A stretch of 16,134 nucleotides of DNA from Octopus sinensis (lineage: Eukaryota), in the NCBI RefSeq assembly GCF_006345805.1, contig NW_021825252.1:1-16134 (forward strand), read 5' to 3'. Below, piece after piece: positions 3,137 to 16,134 of this stretch. The translations under genes were made by a program, and so were the position numbers. Under the pieces are notes generated by a model. The model made no database searches and had not been told where the DNA came from. It worked only from the letters and a program-made list of their open reading frames with translations. Within the stretch, counting starts at the first letter, position 1. Each line of letters opens with the position of its first letter.

Positions 3137-3295
3137 CAGGTGTGGCTGTGTGGTAAGAAGCTTGTTTCCCAACCACACACTCGGGGGTTCAGTCCCACTG
3201 TATGACAACTTGGACAAGTGTCTTCTACTACAGCATCTGGCCAACCAAAGCCTTGTGGGTAGAATTTGGTTGGCAGAAACTAAAAGAAGCCCATC
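3137..3295 (+). mobile_element. SINE family A, 5' half only
   Basis: A box TGGCTGTGTGG at 3143-3153 and B box GGTTCAGTCCC at 3186-3196; ends at the (TA)n tract. Confidence 0.85.
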
Positions 3296-3314
3296 ATATA
3301 TTTATACACATACA

Positions 3315-3317
<3 letters not shown>

Positions 3318-3363
<46 letters not shown>

Positions 3364-3364
3364 G

Positions 3365-3400
<36 letters not shown>

Positions 3401-3403
3401 TAT
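3318..3403. repeat. (TA)n microsatellite
   Basis: Direct reading. Confidence 0.95.
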
Positions 3404-3407
3404 AAAA

Positions 3408-3864
3408 TGAGATAGGGGTTGAAAATTCAACCCACATGGGATAACATATATCCAATATACTGCTAGATAGGTACCCAACAAGACTAATACATAGATGTTA
3501 AAAATTGCCAAACAATCAGTTCATCTATGTATTATATGGGCAAAGGTAATAATATTACCGTAATTAATACTACAAAATTAGAAAATGGAGAACATACTAA
3601 ATCAATAAAACATCAACTATCAGATGATACCCAATCAATACTTTATTACACCATTACATATCAGTAAAGGCATTATACAAAATATACAGTAAATGTAAAT
3701 AGACAAGGAAATATAAGTATAAAATATAAAATATAATATGTAATTATATCATATCTGACAGCTGTTTCGGCAGCAAGGGCAGTCATACCTCATTTAACCT
3801 ATAAACCATAAAGGCAGGTATAAATGAGGCATTAACAAGGATGCCCCACGGCCTCTTCAGAGAA
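3408..3864 (-). mobile_element. Hammerhead-bearing non-coding repeat, copy 1 (Penelope pLTR-derived or retrozyme-like)
   Basis: Colinear homology to 7057-7508 in opposite orientation. Includes the exact 16-mer AGCAGTATATTGGATA (3464-3449 vs 7451-7466) and the terminal ATCCCAT(A)GTGGGTT...AACCCCTATCTCA. Confidence 0.7.
3753..3864 (-). ncRNA. Type I hammerhead ribozyme (Penelope-like minimal type) with extended stem II; core intact
   Basis: Minus strand reads UUCU-CUGAAGA(3860-3854)-GGCCGUGGGGCA...UGCCCUUGCUGCC-GAAAC(3768-3764)-AGCU-GUC(3759-3757)-AGAU. All core nucleotides are present, G10.1-C11.1 closes stem II, loop III is palindromic (AGCU), stem I is UCU/AGA. Predicted cleavage between 3757 and 3756. 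Confidence 0.8.
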
Positions 3865-4199
3865 TTTAATTTGTTATAATTGTGAAAAAATTATTTTTCC
3901 ATATACATATAAATATAAAAATATAAAAATGTAAAATATAAAAACTTATGCATAAACTTCATAATGCTACACATATATAATATAATACTCATATAATATA
4001 ATACTCATTGGTACAATAATGCAAGGTAAACAAAACAAAATAAAACAAAATATATATCAGTGTATATATTAATATTAATAAGCACAGTTATTATACATAT
4101 TTGGCTAATAGTTTTAAAAAACTAACACATAGGGAGATGTATGCGCACTACTATTTAAAGTAAAATCATACCTATACCTGAAAAACATATACACAAACA

Positions 4200-4955
4200 T
4201 GAAGCTAGGAAGAAGTGCTGCTGGTGCATTTCAAGATGGGAAACACACAAATACTTCTTTATTCTTAATTGATACATTTAATCAATAAAATATTTCTTCC
4301 CATTATTGATAAAATAATCTCATCTGTTTTGGCAATTGTCGACCCCTTCATGATAGATAATACCTTCAACATTCCATCAAACACAAAGCACAACTCTTTT
4401 TTAGTCCGAGACACTACCTTGGGAATGGATTGTCTATATTTATCGGATACTATGCCTTGTTGTTCTTGTTGGAAATGACGACAGAGGACCCGCTTTTCAA
4501 CAGTTGCGATGATTCTACCAAAGAAAGTTTTGATAACAAGTCTACTCTTCAATGACAAGCAGAGGGTAGCAAGTCTATGATGAAGCTGAGAAACAGTCAC
4601 GTGATGAGGAACCCACACTCTGAATTCAAACACTTTTCCCAGTTCATGAAGGTGTTTTATGATCGAACTATGACTAAAGTTGAACTGCCTTGCTTAATCT
4701 TTTGAGGTTTGCTTTGAATTTTGCTCGGCTGAGTTCGATATTGATAGAACTCGATCATTAGATCACGGAAAATCTGTAGAAGAAATCTTTCCTGGGCGAA
4801 ACTGGTCAAACCATAGCTGGAATGTCCAGGCAACTCACAGCATTGTTTCCATGGACAGAACGACAAATATTTCTTGCTGCTTCCATTGCTAAGGGGTCCC
4901 TTTTCTATTCGTACAACATGAAGTGTCTAATAAACGAAGTCTGATCTAAACTCAT
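4200..4955 (-). pseudogene. Highly decayed mariner-family transposase
   Basis: From ATG 4955: MSLDQTSFIRHFMLYE*KR..AARNICRSVHG, then QLWFDQFRPG, SHSSIIKHLHELGKV, WVPH (4615-4604), FFGRIIATVEKRVL (decayed FLDRIVTGDEKW), CV*WNVEGIIYHE, and a remnant resembling HDNAPAH at ~4238-4214. Multiple stops and frameshifts. Confidence 0.85.
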
Positions 4956-5142
4956 TTTAAAAGATTAAAATCGATACAAACTTAAAGTTTAAGGTTTAAA
5001 GTAATCCGCAAATAAAAATATTAGAATGTAAAAGAAATATTTATTTCAAATATTGAAAAGAACCGTGGTCATGTGAAAAATGCAGGTCATGTGAAGAATG
5101 AGGTCATGTGAAAAATGCAGAAGACAGTTTCCCAACCTATTA
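4956..5142 (-). mobile_element. 5' UTR and probable 5' terminal inverted repeat of the mariner relic
   Basis: Plus strand ...TTTCCCAACCTAT|TA (5128-5142) resembles mariner termini (..CCAACCTAA|TA), ~185 nt upstream of the transposase ATG. No 3' TIR was found. Confidence 0.5.
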
Positions 5143-5149
5143 TACCTCA

Positions 5150-5205
5150 TTACCCCAGCACGGCCGTAGTCTGATGACTGAGTCAAATAAAAGAATAAAA
5201 GAGCA
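5150..5205 (+). mobile_element. SINE family A extreme 3' tail fragment
   Basis: CCAGCACGGCCGTAGTCTGATGACTGAGTCAAATAAAAGAATAAAAG aligns to the family tail CCAGCATGGCC..AGTCAAATGACTGAAGCAAGTAAAAG. Confidence 0.55.
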
Positions 5206-5443
5206 AAAAAATATCTAAATAAATACAAAATATAATTTGAGGTAGTAATTATTTTCTGGGAAACAAAACCATATCCTCAAAATAATGACTGAAGTGAATA
5301 ATTAGAGTTTAAAGCTGCACTAATGAGTCATCCTTTATTCCTCTAACGAACTCCATAAGATAAAATTTTTCTGTATTCACCATCCACACGCATCTCTACC
5401 GGTAAATATTCAGTGAAGCTCTTGCAGAGCGACGAAAGCTTAC

Positions 5444-5482
5444 CTGCAGCTCTTTCTAGCAATGATAGTAATTCATGATCCC
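5444..5482 (-). CDS. Candidate 39-nt phase 1-1 exon (GDHELLSLLERAA)
   Basis: Minus-strand acceptor TTTACATTTCAG| and consensus donor CAG|GTAAGC; a single open frame. It lies on the opposite strand to the other candidate exons. Confidence 0.3.
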
Positions 5483-5507
5483 CTGAAATGTAAATATATA
5501 TATATAT

Positions 5508-6291
5508 AGAAGCATCAGATGTGGTGTGCAAGAGAGACGTCTGCGCTGGTATGGTCATGTGGCAAGAATGGATGAGGATAGCTGTGTGAAAAAGTGCCAC
5601 ACCCTAGCGGTTGAGTGAATCTGTGGAAGACGTAGACCCATGAAGACCTGGGATGAAGTGGTGAAGCACGACCTTCGAACTTTAGGCCTCACTGAGGCAA
5701 TGACTAGTGACCAAGACTTTTGGAAATATGCTGTGCTTGATAAGACCCGGCAAGCCAAATGAGACCATAACCTCGTGGCCTATGCCAGGGGCGTAACCGG
5801 CCCACTTATGCGTACCTTTTCCTTCTTTGGACACTAAATTCTGCTTGTGAAGACCTGTTGATGCAAATGAAATCAAAATCAAGTTCGATGTCTTGCGTCC
5901 GTGCTACCGAGGTGGAAAGAGCACCATCCGAGTGTGATCGTTGACAGAGCAGCTAACCGGCTTCCATGCCAGTGGCATGTAAAAGGCACCATTCGAGCGT
6001 GATCGTCACTAGCATCGCCTTACTGGCACCTGTGCCAGTGGCATGTGTAAAAAGCTTTGTGCGAGGTCGTTAACAGTACCACCTGACTGGCCCCCATGCC
6101 GATTGGCATGTAAAAGCACACACTACACACTCGGAGTGGTTGTCGTTAGGAAGGGCATCCAGCTGTAGAAACTCTGCCAAATCAAGATTGGAGCCTGGTG
6201 CAGCCATGTGGTTCACCAGCCCTCAGTCAAATCATCCAACCCATGCTAGCATGGAAAGAGGACATTAAATGATGATGATGATGATGATGAT
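5508..6291 (+). mobile_element. RTE-clade LINE, 5'-truncated 3' end
   Basis: 5508-5762 translates RSIRCGVQERRLRWYGHVARMDEDSCVKKCHTLAVE*ICGRRRPMKTWDEVVKHDLRTLGL...AK*, matching the RLRWxGHVxRM / GRPxxTW C-terminal signature of RTE ORFs. It is followed by a ~510-nt 3' UTR and a (GAT)n tail (~6271-6291). Confidence 0.88.
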
Positions 6292-6424
6292 TTTTTTGGC
6301 CGCTCAGTTGTATCTATCAATTTATCTTTGTCTGTGTGTGTGTGTATATATATAATATATATATTATATATATATGTATATATATATATATATTATATAT
6401 ATATATAATATATATTATATATAT

Positions 6425-6610: not shown

Positions 6611-6687
6611 TCAACATAAAAAAAGCACTAGGCTGTGTCTCATATTTTTGTTTGCTCACTCAGTTGTTTCTATCAATTTGTCTCTGT

Positions 6688-6688
6688 A

Positions 6689-6750
<62 letters not shown>

Positions 6751-6985
6751 ATACATACATACATATATAATATATATATATATAATACATATATATATAT
6801 AATATATATATAATATCTGTATATATATATAGATATATATATAGATATATATATATAATACTATAATATATATATAATACATATATATAATAAATATATA
6901 TATATATATATAATATATATATATAATACACACACATATATATATGTATATATATATTATATATATATATATAAGATATATATTT
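6688..6985. repeat. (TG)n followed by long imperfect (TA)n
   Basis: Direct reading. Confidence 0.95.
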
Positions 6986-7056
6986 ATACTCTTGTGCATG
7001 TGTATTTTGTTTCATATTGTATTTGCATTTGTATATTTTTATAATTGTACTTTATA

Positions 7057-7174
7057 ATCCCTGACAAGGTCTTGAGATATATAACTCATTTTTAACTGCA
7101 TATTACCTCAATACATCTGACTAATATAGGCACAATGAGATACCTTTATCTACAGGCTGAAACAGCTGTAAGAT
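7057..7174 (+). ncRNA. Degenerate type I hammerhead ribozyme, paralog of 3753-3864
   Basis: AUCC-CUGACAA(7061-7067, G8 to A)-GGUCUUGAGAU...AUCUACAGGCU-GAAAC(7159-7163)-AGCU-GUA(7168-7170)-AGAU. Same topology, with a 91-nt stem II containing CUCAUU/AAUGAG (7085-7090/7134-7139) and AUAUUA/UAAUAU helices. Confidence 0.7.
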
Positions 7175-7508
7175 CCATTTTATATGTAATATTTTTATGG
7201 TATTATCTTACTTATTGATGTAAATTGTTTTATTCTGTTGGATTTGGATGTTCCTATTGAAGTAGTTAATAAATAATATGAATTGGTAATATCTGTAAGT
7301 CGATGATTGAAAGGAATCTGTTCCTCCAATTTCTTATTTGTATTATGAATTTGAGGTAAAATATTTTAACTTCGCCCATCTAATACAATAAATGAATTAA
7401 TTGCATTGCAATTATAAGCATTTATGTATTTGCCTTTTGGGTACTTCACCAGCAGTATATTGGATAACTGATATCCCATAGTGGGTTACACTCATAACCC
7501 CTATCTCA
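7057..7508 (+). mobile_element. Hammerhead-bearing non-coding repeat, copy 2
   Basis: Aligns by eye to the reverse complement of 3408-3864 across the ribozyme, the AT-rich body (e.g. GCCCATCTAATACA vs GCCCATATAATACA) and the 3' hairpin. Confidence 0.7.
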
Positions 7509-7560
7509 CTTTGTACTTTTATGCATATATATATATATATTATATATATATATATATATA

Positions 7561-7965
7561 CTCTTTACTCTCTTTTACTTGCTTCAGTCATTTGACTGGG
7601 GCCATGCTGGAGCACCGCCTTTAGTCGAGCAAATCGATCACGAGACCTATTCTTTGTAAGCCCATTACTTATTCTATCGGTCTCTTTTGCCGAACCGCTA
7701 AGTGACAGGGACGTACACACACCAGCATCGGTTGTCAAGCAATGCTAGGGGAACAAATACAGACACACAAATACACACACATACATATATATATATGCAT
7801 ATATACGACAGGCTTCTTTCAATTTCCATCTACCAAATCCACTCACAAGGCATTGGTTGGCCCGGGGCTATAGCAGAAGACACTTGCCCAAGATGCCACG
7901 CAGTGAGACCGAACGCGGAACCATGTGGCTGGTTAGCAAGCTACTTACCACACAGCCACTCCTGC
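7561..7965 (-). mobile_element. tRNA-derived SINE family A, near full-length, with internal microsatellite
   Basis: Minus-strand head GAGTGGCTGTGTGGTAAG (A box) and GCGTTCGGTCTC (B-box-like), then ..CTTGGGCAAGTGTCTTC.., an internal (TA)/(TG) tract, and the tail ..GGTGCTCCAGCATGGCC..GACTGAAGCAAGTAAAAG. Homologous to other copies in the window. Confidence 0.85.
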
Positions 7966-8150: not shown

Positions 8151-8886
8151 AATACACACGCACACACAATATATGTGCACATTCATATATATTATATCAA
8201 AGTCAATGTCTTGTGTGTGTGTCTTTCTAGCTTGTAAGAAGATGAAATTTTATAAATATTACTTCATTTGTGTCTAATATCTATGGTTAAAATTTCATCA
8301 ACAGCCAAAATATATGAATTGTCATGGGGGTTGTGGCCATTATGCAAAGAATATAATTTCCAAATTTCGTAAAAATCAATTCAGTGCTTTTGACCTAGTT
8401 TTGATCATAAAAGAAATTACTAAAATTTGGCAGTTAAGGCCCCCATTAGGGTGTCTTAGAATCCTCATGAGAAGTGGAAACTTTGAGAACACTTCTTGAT
8501 GTGTGTCAATTACCCATGGTTGAAATTTCATCAACATCGCAAATTTATGAATTTTCATTGGGGTTCTTCCCCCTTTAAGCCATCTCAAATTCAAACCAAA
8601 CATATTGCATTATACTCACCCTTATACATTGAATCTAAGTTTCAAATATCATAAGGATCCATTCAGTAATTTTGGTCGATGAAATTATATAAAACACACA
8701 GCATTACCATTCTCCCTAGGCTTGGATTTTGTGTTCCAAATTTCATTAGGATCGGTGCAGCAATTTTCGAATATATAAGTAACACACAGACACACATAAA
8801 GACATTGACTTTGATATAATATATATGAATGTGCACATATATATATACATATATATGTGTGTGTGTGCGTGTGTATTATATATATA
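8142..8886. mobile_element. Non-autonomous TIR (MITE-like) element embedded in (TA)n
   Basis: Perfect 44-bp inverted repeat at 8169-8212 / 8799-8842 plus a second perfect 27-bp block at 8142-8168 / 8860-8886. Internal direct repeats at ~8266-8333 / ~8500-8567. No coding capacity. Confidence 0.8.
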
Positions 8887-9040
8887 TATGTATATTATAT
8901 ATATGTGTATATATATATGTATATAAATATATATATTGTATATATATATGCATATATATATATACATATATGTGTGTGATATATATGTGTGTATATATAT
9001 GTGGTGTATATATATGTATATATATGTATATGTATATATA

Positions 9041-9076
<36 letters not shown>

Positions 9077-9138
9077 TATATATATATAAGTATATATATA
9101 TATAAGTATATATATATATAAGTATATATATATATATA

Positions 9139-9186
<48 letters not shown>

Positions 9187-9202
9187 ATATGTGTGTGTGT
9201 GT
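8841..9202. repeat. Compound (TA)n/(TG)n microsatellite with short higher-order units
   Basis: Direct reading; includes three TATATATATATAAG-like units at ~9078-9125. Confidence 0.95.
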
Positions 9203-9265
9203 ATCATCATCATTGTTTAATGTCCGCTTTCTATGCCAGCCATAGAAAGCAAACGTTAAACGATA

Positions 9266-9300
<35 letters not shown>

Positions 9301-9315
9301 TATACATATATATAC

Positions 9316-10677
9316 GTGTATACGTGAACTCTAATGTTTGGAATGTTTACGTGACGGTGCGTTTACTAAACATTAGTAAGAATATTTGCAGTGTACTTTG
9401 TTAATATAATGCCACTTAGTCTGTTACCAATTCGTCAGCAGACTATTAAGCTTCGATGGAAGGATAATTTAAGTATTGGATCTATTGCAAAGATTGTTAA
9501 CAAGTCAAAAAGTGTTGTACACGGTATTCTTAAAGTCTACGATGATTGTGGTTCGTGTGAAGCAAGAAAGTTTACAGGTAGGCCAAGAAAAACGACTAAG
9601 AGAGAAGATCGTGCTATGGTAAAGTTTGTTAAAAAGGACATATTTAAAACTGCTGCTGCTGTTTCTCAGAAAATGAGCATTGTATTGAAGAAAACTTTAT
9701 CTCGAAAAACTGTGTCTCGTTGTTTAGTTGAACATGACCTACAAGCAATAGCACCTGCAGTGAAGCCATTGATCAGCTCTAAGAATAAAAGTGTCGACTT
9801 ACCTTTGCAACCGAACATGTGTTGTGGTCTCAAGAAAAATGGCAAACGGTGCATTTCAGTGATGAATCTAAGTTTATGTTATTTGGCTGAGATGGGAAAA
9901 GGTACGTTCGTAGAAAAGTAGGTGAAAAATTGTCGCCTAAATGCCTTAAGACAAGTGTTAAATTCGGTGGAGGAAGTGTCATGATTTGGGGGATGATATC
10001 TGGAGATGGTGTGGGCCCTTTGGTGCGATTACATGGAATGGTAAATGCAGGAGTTTATAAACAACTTGTAAAAGATCATGTCTTGCTTGTGCTGAGAAAT
10101 TCAATTAATCGACCACCCATATTCATGCAGGACAATGCCCCATGTCACAAGGCTAAAGTGGTCATGAACTTCCTCAAGGCTGAAAAAGGTTATTGTTATG
10201 GAATGTACTGCTCAAAGCCCAGATCTCAATCCTATTGAAAATGTATGGAATATTCTAGGAGAACGTTCGAAAGCCAGAAATCCTAAAACAACTGAGCAAT
10301 TATGGAATGCCCTTCAGGATGAATGGAATAAGATCACCCAGCAAGAAATTGAAAATTTAATTTCCTCATGCAATCGAAGATGTCAGAGTGTGATTGAAGC
10401 TAAATATTAAATAATTCCAGTATTCTCTGTCATTTTTGATTATTTTGTTATTTCTTCTACCGTTCTGATCATTTTGGCCGCCATGGGTTTTGCAGTAAAT
10501 CACTACATCATCCATAACTTTTGTATTATCCTCTCAAATTACTCCAACATCTCAGACAATAACAATTAATATTGTATTTATTGTCTGTGAAAATTATAGA
10601 ATATAAAAACTTTGATAAAAACTTATACTTACTTTTCTAACGAAAACAATGCCGTTCTGAACATTTTGCCGCAACTG
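9316..10677 (+). mobile_element. Tc1-family DNA transposon, 5'-truncated, right IR/DR end intact
   Basis: Carries a transposase pseudogene. The right end ...CATTTTGCCGCAACTG (10677) is followed by TA, i.e. a CAG-type terminus with a TA target. An inner direct repeat lies at 10460-10485. No matching left TIR was found; the 5' boundary is approximate. Confidence 0.85.
9409..10410 (+). pseudogene. Tc1 DD34E transposase pseudogene
   Basis: N-terminal HTH and GRPRKT motif, then FSDESKF (D at 9861), KFGGGSVMIWG, QDNAPCH, SPDLNPIEN, with exactly 34 residues between the second D and E after frame repair. Lesions: frameshift ~9787, TGA at 9888-9890, frameshift ~10187, and a C-terminus ending EAKY instead of the usual AKGGxTKY. 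Confidence 0.92.
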
Positions 10678-11086: not shown

Positions 11087-11431
11087 AACAAATATATATA
11101 CAAAATAAATATGTACAGTGATGATGATGATGATGATATATAAATGAAGCTGAAAACACACGCACACATATGAAACTAATAAAATGATGAAGATGGAGAG
11201 CCCCTTCCAATGTGGAAAGGGTCAGTTAAGTAACATTTACATATTTCCCGAAATATAAAAAGATGACTTTTGCCTTTCTACATTGTAAGAAGCTGTCAGT
11301 CTCCAATGACAAGGCTTCTAGCAAACCACAAGGCTCTTCAGTACATGTGTGTGTGTGTGTGTGTGACTATCTATGTATATGTAAGTATGCACACACACAC
11401 GCACACATGTCTGCATATATAGTTTTGTATG

Positions 11432-15420: not shown

Positions 15421-15774
15421 TACATATACATATGTGCACACATACATATAAGTTAGTTCCTGGGAGATTATTTGCAGAGAAACCCAACCTGAGCTCTGGG
15501 CTGTTGGATTCCAGACCAATACCAAAATTCTTCAAGCATAAGAAATGCCGGTTTCACAACAGTAACACCATAGTTATGTTACACAGACATATACACAGAT
15601 ATATATATATATATATACATACATGTGTATATATAAACATGTGAGTGTGTATGTGTATATATATACACACATATATATACATACGTATATAAAAATAAGC
15701 ATATCTATATAAATGTGTGAGTATTTATGAGAAGGTTGTATGTTATTTCAGGAAAATTTCTTTATTATTTCTAA

Positions 15775-16081
15775 CAAGACTATGGCTATGCTGGAGCACT
15801 GCCTTTAATTGAGCAAATCGACCCCAGTATTTTTTCTTTGTAAGCCTAGTACTTATTCTATCAGTCTCTTTTGCTAAACTGCTAAGCTATGGGGGACATA
15901 TACACACACATACATATATATAGAGAATGGGCTTCTTTCAGTTTCCATCTACCAAATCTACTTACAAGGCTTTGGTTGGCCCCAGGCTATAGTAGAAGTC
16001 ACTTGTGCAAGGTGCCACACAGAGGGACTGAACCCAGAGCCATGTGGTTGGTAAGCAATCTACTTACTACACAGCCGCTCC
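15775..16081 (-). mobile_element. SINE family A copy with internal deletion
   Basis: Colinear with 7561-7965 (GCTGGAGCACTGCCTTTA, TACTTATTCTATC, GGACTGAACCC) but lacks the segment equivalent to ~7720-7765. Confidence 0.85.
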
Positions 16082-16134
16082 CACACCAATACACACATAG
16101 AAATGTATATACACACCATGTACATATGTGTATA

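What the first reader, a model, noticed from the sequence alone, without database searches (positions are those of the whole stretch)
3753..3864. Intact-core hammerhead ribozyme with an ~85-nt stem II in place of the usual short hairpin
Seen: the minus strand has the full core CUGAAGA / GAAA / GUC, a 2-bp stem III closed by the palindromic loop AGCU, and a 3-bp stem I. Stem II runs 3853 to 3769, with a GC-rich basal helix (GGC..GGGGCA / UGCCCU..GCC) and an inner ~16-bp helix (3816-3832 / 3785-3800) capped by a 15-nt loop. Established: minimal type I hammerheads with palindromic loop III occur in Penelope-like element pLTRs and are thought to cleave as dimers. Inference: a stem II this long is atypical for those motifs and would be missed by descriptor searches that cap stem II length. 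It may mark an undescribed hammerhead variant in which the insertion aids folding, dimerisation or protein binding.
Basis: partly seen in the sequence, partly recalled or inferred. Interest (0 to 1): 0.85.

Follow-up and report, generated by a model that had tools for sequence, protein, structure and literature searches.

The report
Hammerhead ribozyme motif with giant stem II
The window really contains a sequence with a complete hammerhead self-cleaving-RNA core whose second helix is about 30 base pairs instead of 4, and an older broken copy lies 3.3 kb away, so it is probably an unusual retroelement-type hammerhead relic rather than a chance match, but nothing yet shows that it cuts.

Summary
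The minus strand 3864-3753 reads UCU-CUGAAGA-[85 nt]-GAAA-C-AGCU-G-UC|AGA. All invariant hammerhead (HHR) core positions are present, with a G10.1-C11.1 pair and a GUC cleavage triplet. The 85-nt stem II folds as one hairpin (-36 kcal/mol, z about -5).

Chance is unlikely. Shuffled windows give a loose match in 0.9% of cases, and none has a comparably stable stem II. In 536 kb of real DNA there were 69 canonical-size hits and none with a long stem II. The 3' half, GAAACAGCUGUC, is identical to that of over 100 canonical invertebrate type-I hammerheads that Rfam recognises.

I also found a diverged second copy at 7058-7174 (+), inside an inverted duplication of about 870 nt. It keeps 10 of 11 invariant core positions (G8 is A) and a long stem II. 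Its basal helix differs from copy 1 by three compensatory pair changes. The architecture therefore predates the duplication.

Against function:
- No Rfam hit at any threshold.
- Stem I is only 3 bp.
- There is no same-strand partner for dimer cleavage.
- No Penelope-like element ORF and no retrozyme-type tandem array.

Verdict: a hammerhead-lineage variant with an expanded helix II, probably a weak or inactive relic. Interest is moderate.

The parts
3861..3863 (-). Copy 1, stem I 5' strand (U2.3 C2.2 U2.1). It pairs with 3754-3756.
   Evidence: sequence read. Only 3 bp, and the helix is not predicted to form on its own.
3854..3860 (-). Copy 1, 5' core CUGAAGA (C3-A9, with N7 = A).
   Evidence: It is one of three CTGANGAG sites in the window.
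3769..3853 (-). Copy 1, stem II: an 85-nt imperfect hairpin. The basal helix is 3842-3853 with 3769-3781. A 5-nt bulge lies at 3837-3841. The upper helix is 3816-3836 with 3782-3800. The apical region is 3801-3815.
   Evidence: -36 kcal/mol, z -4.8 to -5.6, 33 pairs including 5 G.U. The plus strand reaches only -24.1 kcal/mol.
3757..3768 (-). Copy 1, 3' core plus stem III: G12 A13 A14, A15.1 C15.2, loop AGCU, G16.2 U16.1, C17. ACAGCUGU is an 8-nt palindrome. Predicted cleavage falls between 3757 and 3756.
   Evidence: The 12-mer is identical to that of over 100 natural type-I hammerheads, 14 of which score above the RF00163 gathering threshold among 20 loci tested. A dimer through the palindrome is predicted at -9.7 kcal/mol relative to two monomers.
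3754..3756 (-). Copy 1, stem I 3' strand (A1.1 G1.2 A1.3).
   Evidence: In constrained folds this strand is taken up by a local AU hairpin with the downstream flank.
7058..7174 (+). Copy 2, a decayed paralog in inverted orientation. It reads CUGACAA at 7061-7067, where G8 has become A at 7066. Stem II is 91 nt (7068-7158) with G10.1.U11.1 at its base. GAAACAGCUGUA lies at 7159-7170, followed by AGAU at 7171-7174.
   Evidence: Local alignment to copy 1 scores 177, against 73.5 +/- 13 for shuffles (0 of 2000). Without the 3' half it scores 114 against 62 +/- 11, p about 0.001. Stem II still folds as a single hairpin but only at -13.6 kcal/mol, z -1.1.
3137..3940 (-). Arm 1 of the duplicated unit. 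In order it holds an AT-rich stretch, the hammerhead motif, about 350 nt of unique sequence, (TA)n at 3296-3404 and a SINE-like repeat at 3137-3290.
   Evidence: MAFFT alignment A2. BLAST matches 3405-3648 to 7511-7267 at 74% identity, E = 8e-34. Inverted repeat I1 appears.
7001..7964 (+). Arm 2 of the duplicated unit. It has the same order of parts as arm 1, plus about 190 nt more of the SINE-like repeat.

Best explanation
The sequence descends from a genuine type-I hammerhead ribozyme of the invertebrate retroelement kind, the kind with a 2-bp helix III capped by AGCU. Its helix II has expanded from the usual 4 bp plus loop into an imperfect hairpin of about 30 bp. This odd architecture existed before a local duplication produced the two copies now at 3753-3864 (-) and 7058-7174 (+). 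The base of the long helix stayed paired in both copies through compensatory substitutions.

Copy 1 still has every catalytic nucleotide. It could in principle cleave between C17 (3757) and A1.1 (3756) by the ordinary hammerhead mechanism, in which the 2'-OH of C17 attacks its own 3' phosphate, with G12 and G8 acting as general base and acid. But it has a 3-bp helix I, a 2-bp helix III and no loop-loop tertiary contact. It would therefore behave at best as a slow minimal hammerhead, and would need a second molecule to build the 8-bp intermolecular helix III (ACAGCUGU with itself). Copy 2 is dead (G8A).

Shown: the sequence anatomy, the hairpin stability, the strand bias, the paralog, and the identity of the 3' half to natural hammerheads. 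Inferred: a retroelement origin, weak or absent present-day activity, and relic status.
For: - All core positions, G10.1-C11.1 and the GUC triplet are present.
- Stem II has z = -4.8 and is strand-specific, with 5 G.U pairs and no A.C mismatch.
- Chance matches are rare and lack a structured stem II.
- GAAACAGCUGUC equals the 3' half of over 100 natural hammerheads, which have 5-6-bp stem I and 14-nt stem II. Of 20 loci tested, 14 pass the Rfam RF00163 threshold.
- The paralog is homologous across the whole motif.
- 10 of 11 invariant core positions, and 14 of 16 positions of the 3' core, are shared, against 43-53% in neighbouring segments.
- Of the 12 pairs in the basal helix of stem II, 3 changed on both sides and 4 changed on one side while staying paired. 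In all, 95.7% of cells pair, against 51.5% or less when the partner is slid.
- The probability of 3 or more double transitions among 8 G-C pairs is 3e-4 at the arms' background rate.
- The literature reports Penelope-like-element hammerheads with longer helix II, shorter helix I and palindromic helix III, low activity even as dimers, and some Naiad elements with core halves 35-50 nt apart (PMC4209133, PMC8557442).
Against: - No Rfam hammerhead hit, even at E <= 10.
- Stem I is 3 bp and is not formed in constrained folds.
- No same-strand second copy exists within 16 kb.
- No RT or GIY-YIG ORF, no tandem array.
- No other relatives turned up by pattern scans or protein-proxy searches.
- None of about 130 natural relatives has a long stem II.
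- With only two sequences the shuffle control for covariation is weak (51 of 500). The compensatory count stops being significant if the local G/C transition rate is 0.45-0.6.
- Core conservation (10 of 11) is not unusual against the arm-wide mean of 75%.
Confidence: 0.6

Rival explanations
1. The conserved functional unit is the hairpin itself, either a pri-miRNA-like or other hairpin RNA gene or a transposon-derived foldback. The hammerhead-like letters on its flanks are then coincidental or irrelevant.
For: - The geometry fits an animal pri-miRNA: a lower stem of 12 positions, a bulge, an upper stem of about 21 bp and a 15-nt apical region.
- The upper-stem arms are about 80% identical between the copies, while the lower stem covaries.
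- Copy 2 keeps the hairpin topology although its G8 is mutated.
- The strand bias fits any minus-strand RNA.
Against: - The flanks are not merely similar to a hammerhead. All 11 invariant positions are present, and the 12-mer is identical to the canonical natural 3' half.
- By my estimate the chance of that next to a given hairpin is about 1e-8 or less.
- No Rfam miRNA family matches the site.
- Copy 2's hairpin is no more stable than shuffles (z -1.1).
- The 5-nt one-sided bulge is unusual for a pri-miRNA.
Confidence: 0.15
2. It is a functional, host-retained hammerhead variant in which the long helix II is an added domain (protein-binding, regulatory or a folding aid) and self-cleavage is used at this locus.
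For: - Copy 1 has an intact core after about 25% divergence between the arms.
- There are compensatory changes in stem II.
- A G.U strand bias is present.
- Co-opted hammerheads with very large helices have a precedent in the discontinuous CLEC2 hammerhead, whose helix I is 150-1500 nt (PMC6155905).
Against: - Zero changes in about 17 constrained positions has probability about 0.1 under neutral decay at half the arm divergence, so selection is not required.
- Stem I is marginal and there is no partner copy.
- The surroundings are microsatellites and decayed transposons, with no recognisable gene.
- No orthologs were available to test conservation.
Confidence: 0.12
3. It is pure coincidence. 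An AT-rich, repeat-laden genome threw up a hairpin flanked by CUGANGA and GAAA...GUC, with no hammerhead ancestry.
For: - The hammerhead consensus is short, and matches are expected by chance in large databases (PMC3088659).
- A loose descriptor hits 0.9% of shuffled windows.
- Chance hits were seen in the collections (L012, L121, L126).
- There is no Rfam support.
Against: - Chance hits have unstructured spacers and no stem I.
- None of 28 shuffle hits and none of the hits in 536 kb of real DNA has a stable long stem II.
- Helix III has exactly the canonical sequence.
- The motif was already present in the ancestor of the two copies.
Confidence: 0.08

Closest known systems
Canonical metazoan type-I hammerhead (Rfam RF00163 Hammerhead_1), as carried by invertebrate non-LTR retrozymes and satellite-like repeats
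   Same: - The core is identical.
- It has G10.1-C11.1.
- The 3' half GAAAC-AGCU-GUC is identical (a 2-bp helix III with a palindromic tetraloop).
- The topology is type I, with helix I open.
- Shown by 123 hits in invertebrate-associated metagenome contigs. Of 20 loci tested, 14 are above the RF00163 threshold.
   Different: - Natural members have a 4-bp helix II with a 6-nt loop (14 nt), a 5-6-bp helix I with an internal loop for the loop-loop contact, and N7 = U or C.
- Here helix II is 85 nt, helix I is 3 bp and N7 = A.
- No tandem array of 170-400-nt units is present.
- The Rfam model does not score it.
Minimal hammerheads of Penelope-like elements (Cervera & de la Pena 2014, PMC4209133; Lunse et al. 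2017, cited in PMC6765202)
   Same: - The trend is towards a longer helix II (6-8 bp) and a shorter helix I (2-5 bp).
- Helix III is palindromic.
- Action is presumed to be as a dimer.
- Activity in vitro is very low.
- The location is next to (TA)n-type microsatellites, which some PLE clades target (PMC8557442).
   Different: - No PLE ORF and no pLTR arrangement is visible in the window.
- There is no unpaired nucleotide between A9 and 10.1.
- Helix II is about four times longer than any described.
- The second copy is inverted, not tandem.
Naiad PLE 'HHR_half_core' cases (Craig et al. 2021, PMC8557442)
   Same: Hammerhead core halves are separated by an unusually long spacer (35-50 nt) that does not fit standard descriptors. 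They occur in elements with a (TA)n insertion bias, and the paper says these elements survive only as old remnants in cephalopods.
   Different: - Those cases were flagged only by string matches, and no stem II structure was reported.
- The spacer here is 85-91 nt and forms a stable hairpin.
Discontinuous hammerhead of mammalian CLEC2 3' UTRs (Martick et al. 2008, via PMC6155905)
   Same: It is a natural hammerhead in which one helix carries a very large insertion while the core stays intact.
   Different: The insertion there is in helix I (150-1500 nt) of a type-III motif. That motif is conserved across species and is shown to cleave. Here the insertion is in helix II of a type-I motif and cleavage is unproven.

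Membership tests
Hammerhead ribozyme (clan CL00010), type I | Invariant core: C3 U4 G5 A6 N7 G8 A9, G12 A13 A14, A15.1-U16.1, H17 | tested here: met
   Copy 1 reads CUGAAGA ... GAAA ... U-C. Copy 2 fails at G8, which is A at 7066.
Hammerhead ribozyme (clan CL00010), type I | Three helices around the core, with helix II closed by G10.1-C11.1, helix III closed by a loop and helix I open | tested here: inconclusive
   Helices II and III are present. Helix I has only 3 pairs and is not formed in constrained folds, because its 3' strand is taken up by a flanking AU hairpin.
Hammerhead ribozyme (clan CL00010), type I | Scores at or above the gathering threshold of an Rfam hammerhead covariance model | tested here: not met
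   No hammerhead family matched at gathering, nor at E <= 10 in 3600-4000 or in the whole window. Natural relatives with the same 3' half score 34-47 bits. The 71 extra nucleotides in stem II and the short stem I explain the miss but do not replace the test.
Hammerhead ribozyme (clan CL00010), type I | Tertiary contact between loop 2 and a loop or bulge of helix I (extended, fast hammerheads) | tested here: not met
   There is no loop 1 within a 3-bp helix I, and the apical loop of helix II is about 30 bp from the core. The mismatch and bulges near the base of helix II could substitute, but that is speculation.
Hammerhead ribozyme (clan CL00010), type I | Site-specific self-cleavage 3' of H17, giving 2',3'-cyclic phosphate and 5'-OH ends | not testable with these tools
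   This needs in vitro transcription and cleavage assays, or end-specific RNA-seq.
Penelope-like element hammerhead (pLTR min-HHR) | Lies in the pseudo-LTR of an element encoding RT and usually GIY-YIG endonuclease, typically in tandem or partial-tandem copies | tested here: not met
   No RT or endonuclease match was found among the ten stop-to-stop ORFs scanned, and no RT-like reading frame of 50 aa or more is evident in the window. There is no direct repeat of the motif, and the only other copy is inverted. A heavily 5'-truncated copy would also lack the ORF, so origin from a PLE is not excluded.
Penelope-like element hammerhead (pLTR min-HHR) | Short helix I, palindromic 15.2-16.2/loop 3, G10.1-C11.1 | tested here: met
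   ACAGCUGU is an 8-nt palindrome, and a dimer is predicted to be favourable.
Penelope-like element hammerhead (pLTR min-HHR) | Extra unpaired nucleotide between A9 and 10.1; helix II of 6-8 bp | tested here: not met
   A9 is followed directly by G10.1, which pairs with C11.1. Helix II has 33 pairs over 85 nt.
Metazoan non-LTR retrozyme | Tandem repeats of about 170-400 nt, each carrying one type-I hammerhead | tested here: not met
   TRF finds no repeat with a period above 21 nt. The descriptor finds a single intact motif in the window.
Animal pri-miRNA hairpin (rival) | Stem of about 35 bp (about 11-bp lower stem, about 22-bp upper stem), apical loop of 10 nt or more, mature arms conserved | tested here: inconclusive
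   The geometry fits, and the upper arms are about 80% identical between the copies. No Rfam miRNA family matches the site. Small-RNA reads cannot be tested here.

The most novel reading that the evidence does not exclude
A new hammerhead architecture in which helix II is a pri-miRNA-sized hairpin of about 30 bp, kept paired by compensatory substitutions. The ribozyme would cut 12 nt downstream of the hairpin base and so define the end of a hairpin RNA. That RNA could be a Drosha-independent small-RNA precursor or a protein-binding module carried by a so far undescribed retroelement family.
Probability: 0.08. Interest if true: 0.75.

Novelty: new variant of a known kind. Interest (0 to 1): 0.45.

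Why it matters
Hammerheads in animal genomes are found with descriptors and covariance models that assume a short helix II. If a lineage with a 30-bp helix II is real and widespread, current censuses miss it. It would also show that helix II can carry a large added domain, as helix I does in the CLEC2 hammerhead. The paralog pair gives a natural experiment: copy 1 has an intact core, and copy 2 carries G8A. If it is only a decaying relic, the value is smaller. It would then document how a retroelement hammerhead degenerates, and show that a perfect core can persist by chance through about 25% divergence.

Tried and rejected
- **Rfam.** I ran it at gathering and at E <= 10, on the site and on the whole window. 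It gave no hammerhead hit. The only hits were microsatellite look-alikes of mir-297, mir-466 and similar families.
- **Exact look-ups of window ORFs** to find the source contig. Nothing was on record.
- **The 142-aa frame at 4268-4693**, which I thought mariner-like from memory. It has no Pfam hit and no homolog, so I dropped the idea.
- **A six-frame peptide of the motif** used as a proxy for paralogs in the protein collection. No hit at E <= 10.
- **A 59-aa frame of the shared 350-nt region** searched against 1.8 billion representatives. It gave two weak hits to long proteins, which I read as uninformative.
- **Pattern scans for long-stem-II relatives.**
  - The GGC...GCC form with a 60-90-nt spacer gave none in metagenome or viral contigs.
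  - A looser form with a 50-80-nt spacer gave one chance hit in viral contigs.
- **Sampling a related genome** through Tc1-family proteins (ENA assembly ERZ21867824, five loci, 103 kb). It shares only the Tc1 element with the window. It has none of the SINE-like repeat, no copy of the motif and no Rfam hammerhead. I take it to be a different species.
- **Naming the organism.** A cephalopod origin remains a lead from memory only.
- **Supplementary files of the two PLE papers.** They are not held, and the Lunse et al. paper is not held.
- **A covariance model built from the natural family.** I considered it and rejected it as circular, because those sequences were retrieved with the candidate's own core string.

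Full report
**What is there**

Read on the minus strand, 3864-3753 is UCU-CUGAAGA-[85 nt]-GAAA-C-AGCU-G-UC-AGA. In hammerhead numbering:
- C3-A9 lie at 3860-3854.
- Stem II lies at 3853-3769.
- G12-A14 lie at 3768-3766.
- A15.1 and C15.2 lie at 3765-3764.
- The loop AGCU lies at 3763-3760.
- G16.2, U16.1 and C17 lie at 3759-3757.
- The scissile bond would fall between 3757 and 3756.

Every invariant core nucleotide is present. The 10.1-11.1 pair is G-C and the triplet is GUC. Stem I is three pairs (3863-3861 with 3754-3756).

The 85-nt stem II folds as one imperfect hairpin of 33 pairs at -36 kcal/mol, with z = -4.8 against dinucleotide shuffles. The complementary strand reaches only -24.1 kcal/mol. 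The helix has five G.U pairs and no A.C mismatch, so the structure belongs to the strand that carries the core.

**Is it chance?**

- A deliberately loose descriptor finds only this site in the window. The descriptor asks for the core, at least 3 closing pairs for stem II, a compact stem III, a UH triplet and at least 3 pairs for stem I.
- In 3000 dinucleotide shuffles it matched 28 times (0.0093 per window). None of those had a stem II of comparable energy density.
- A collection scan allowing a 50-80-nt spacer returned one hit whose spacer is unstructured (z = +0.6). That is what a chance hit looks like.
- Rfam gives no support. No hammerhead family matches at gathering or at E <= 10.

**Link to natural hammerheads**

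I scanned metagenome contigs with CTGANGAG...CGAAACAGCTGTC and a short spacer. Of 123 matches, 100 are exactly 33 nt long. These are canonical type-I hammerheads with a 4-bp stem II, a 6-nt loop and a 5-6-bp stem I. Among the 20 loci I tested, Rfam scores 14 above the RF00163 threshold.

The candidate's 3' half, GAAAC-AGCU-GUC, is therefore letter for letter the helix III of a large natural invertebrate family. One common variant even shares its stem II base (GGCC...GCC). None of these relatives has a long stem II. The retrieval used the candidate's own core string, so the independent information is only that this exact half is a common natural form.

**A second copy**

A 19-mer at 7156-7174 (+) matches GCCGAAACAGCTGTCAGAT at 17 of 19 positions. 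Aligning the surroundings shows homology across the whole motif. The score is 177 against 73.5 +/- 13 for shuffles (0 of 2000). With the 3' half removed it is 114 against 62 +/- 11.

Copy 2 (7058-7174, + strand) has these features:
- It reads CUGACAA, so G8 is A.
- Its base pair 10.1-11.1 is G.U.
- Its 3' half is GAAACAGCUGUA|AGAU.
- Its stem II is 91 nt. It still folds as a single hairpin, but at -13.6 kcal/mol and z -1.1.

The two copies lie inside two arms of about 870 nt, 3137-3940 (-) and 7001-7964 (+), which align at 75% mean identity. Both arms have the same order of parts: AT-rich stretch, motif, about 350 nt, (TA)n, SINE-like repeat. I could not decide whether this is an inverted segmental duplication or two insertions of a composite element.

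**What the paralog says**

- Ten of eleven invariant core positions are shared.
- The 16-nt 3' core is 14 of 16 identical, while adjacent segments are 43-53% identical. That is unusual locally, with P about 0.002 before correcting for windows. It is not unusual against the best-conserved part of the arm (76-82%) or the arm mean.
- In the basal 12-pair helix of stem II, three pairs changed on both sides (G-C to A-U twice, C-G to U-A once). Four more changed on one side and stayed paired. In all, 95.7% of cells pair, against 51.5% or less when the 3' partner is slid.
- At the arms' background G/C transition rate (0.137), three or more double changes among eight G-C pairs has P = 3e-4. If the local rate is really 0.45-0.6, P rises to 0.2-0.6. 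With two sequences the shuffle control is weak (51 of 500).
- The upper-stem arms (CUCAUUU / AAUGAG and their neighbours) are about 80% identical.

The long helix II and the core were therefore both present in the common ancestor. The helix base appears to have been kept paired afterwards.

**How it would work**

The chemistry would be the standard hammerhead reaction at C17. But stem I is three pairs and does not form in constrained folds. Its 3' strand is captured by a local AU hairpin. Stem III is two pairs, and the apical loop of helix II is far too distant for the usual loop-loop contact.

The 8-nt palindrome ACAGCUGU allows a double-hammerhead dimer, predicted at -9.7 kcal/mol relative to two monomers. 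That is how newt and PLE hammerheads are thought to act (PMC4209133, PMC6765202). Here there is no same-strand partner, because copy 2 is antisense and carries G8A. Any activity would need two transcripts and would probably be slow.

**Context**

The window is eukaryotic and full of TA, TG and AG microsatellites. It also holds:
- a SINE-like repeat in three copies;
- a decayed Tc1-like transposase at 9370-10407.

No RT or GIY-YIG ORF and no retrozyme-type tandem array is present. PLE membership is therefore not shown.

The literature describes a trend in PLE hammerheads towards a longer helix II and a shorter helix I. It also reports Naiad elements with core halves 35-50 nt apart and a (TA)n insertion bias (PMC4209133, PMC8557442). 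These make a truncated retroelement origin plausible, but that is inference.

**Verdict**

The best reading (confidence about 0.6) is a hammerhead-lineage variant with an expanded helix II that predates a local duplication. Copy 1 is formally intact but probably weak or inactive, and copy 2 is dead.

Rivals:
- The hairpin itself is the functional unit, miRNA-like (0.15).
- A host-retained functional variant (0.12).
- Coincidence (0.08).

Novelty: a new variant of a known kind. Interest is moderate (0.45). The architecture is unusual and has one supporting paralog, but there is no activity, no orthologs and no family context yet.

Noticed in passing
window 3137-3940 (-) and 7001-7964 (+): Two arms of about 870 nt lie in inverted orientation at 75% mean identity, separated by about 3.06 kb. 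Both have the same order of parts, and identity along them is very uneven (43-88%). It is unresolved whether this is a segmental inverted duplication or two insertions of a composite element. A transcript across both arms would form a long dsRNA.
   Followed up: partly
window 3137-3290 (-), 7594-7964 (+), 15778-16104 (+): A SINE-like repeat is present in three copies, each next to (TA)n. Its reverse complement has a tRNA T-arm-like head, but ARAGORN calls no tRNA. From memory it resembles an abundant octopus SINE, which would make the window cephalopod. This is untested.
   Followed up: partly
window 9370-10407 (+): A decayed Tc1-like transposase (Pfam HTH_Tnp_Tc3_2 and DDE_3) carries frameshifts and stops. 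It is 85% identical in DNA to copies on long contigs of ENA assembly ERZ21867824, which share nothing else with the window. The same transposon family therefore appears to occur in another species.
   Followed up: partly
L006 1027-1059 (-) and 1477-1509 (+); L089 (two decayed copies): Some metagenome contigs carry two canonical hammerheads in inverted orientation a few hundred nt apart. The set also contains naturally decayed copies with single core mutations, such as CUGACAGG, CAGACGAG and CCGAUGAG. These are useful as a picture of how such motifs erode.
   Followed up: no
window 6680-6770, 8810-9330, 11340-11410, 15580-15700: Sub-threshold Rfam hits to mir-297, mir-466, mir-3149 and mir-1277 all fall on TA/TG microsatellites, on both strands. 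I read them as composition artefacts, not miRNA genes.
   Followed up: yes
window 4268-4926 (-): Open frames of 142 and 89 aa lie just upstream of copy 1 on the same strand. They looked mariner-like to me but have no Pfam match and no homolog among 5.8 billion proteins.
   Followed up: yes
window 5067-5120: An 18-nt tandem repeat (GGTCATGTGAAAAATGCA, 3.1 copies) lies at the edge of the GC-richer block 5000-6300, which sits between the two arms. The content of that block is unidentified.
   Followed up: no
L003 18422-18550 (-): A 5S rRNA gene scores just above the Rfam threshold in one of the ENA loci fetched through the Tc1 family.
   Followed up: no
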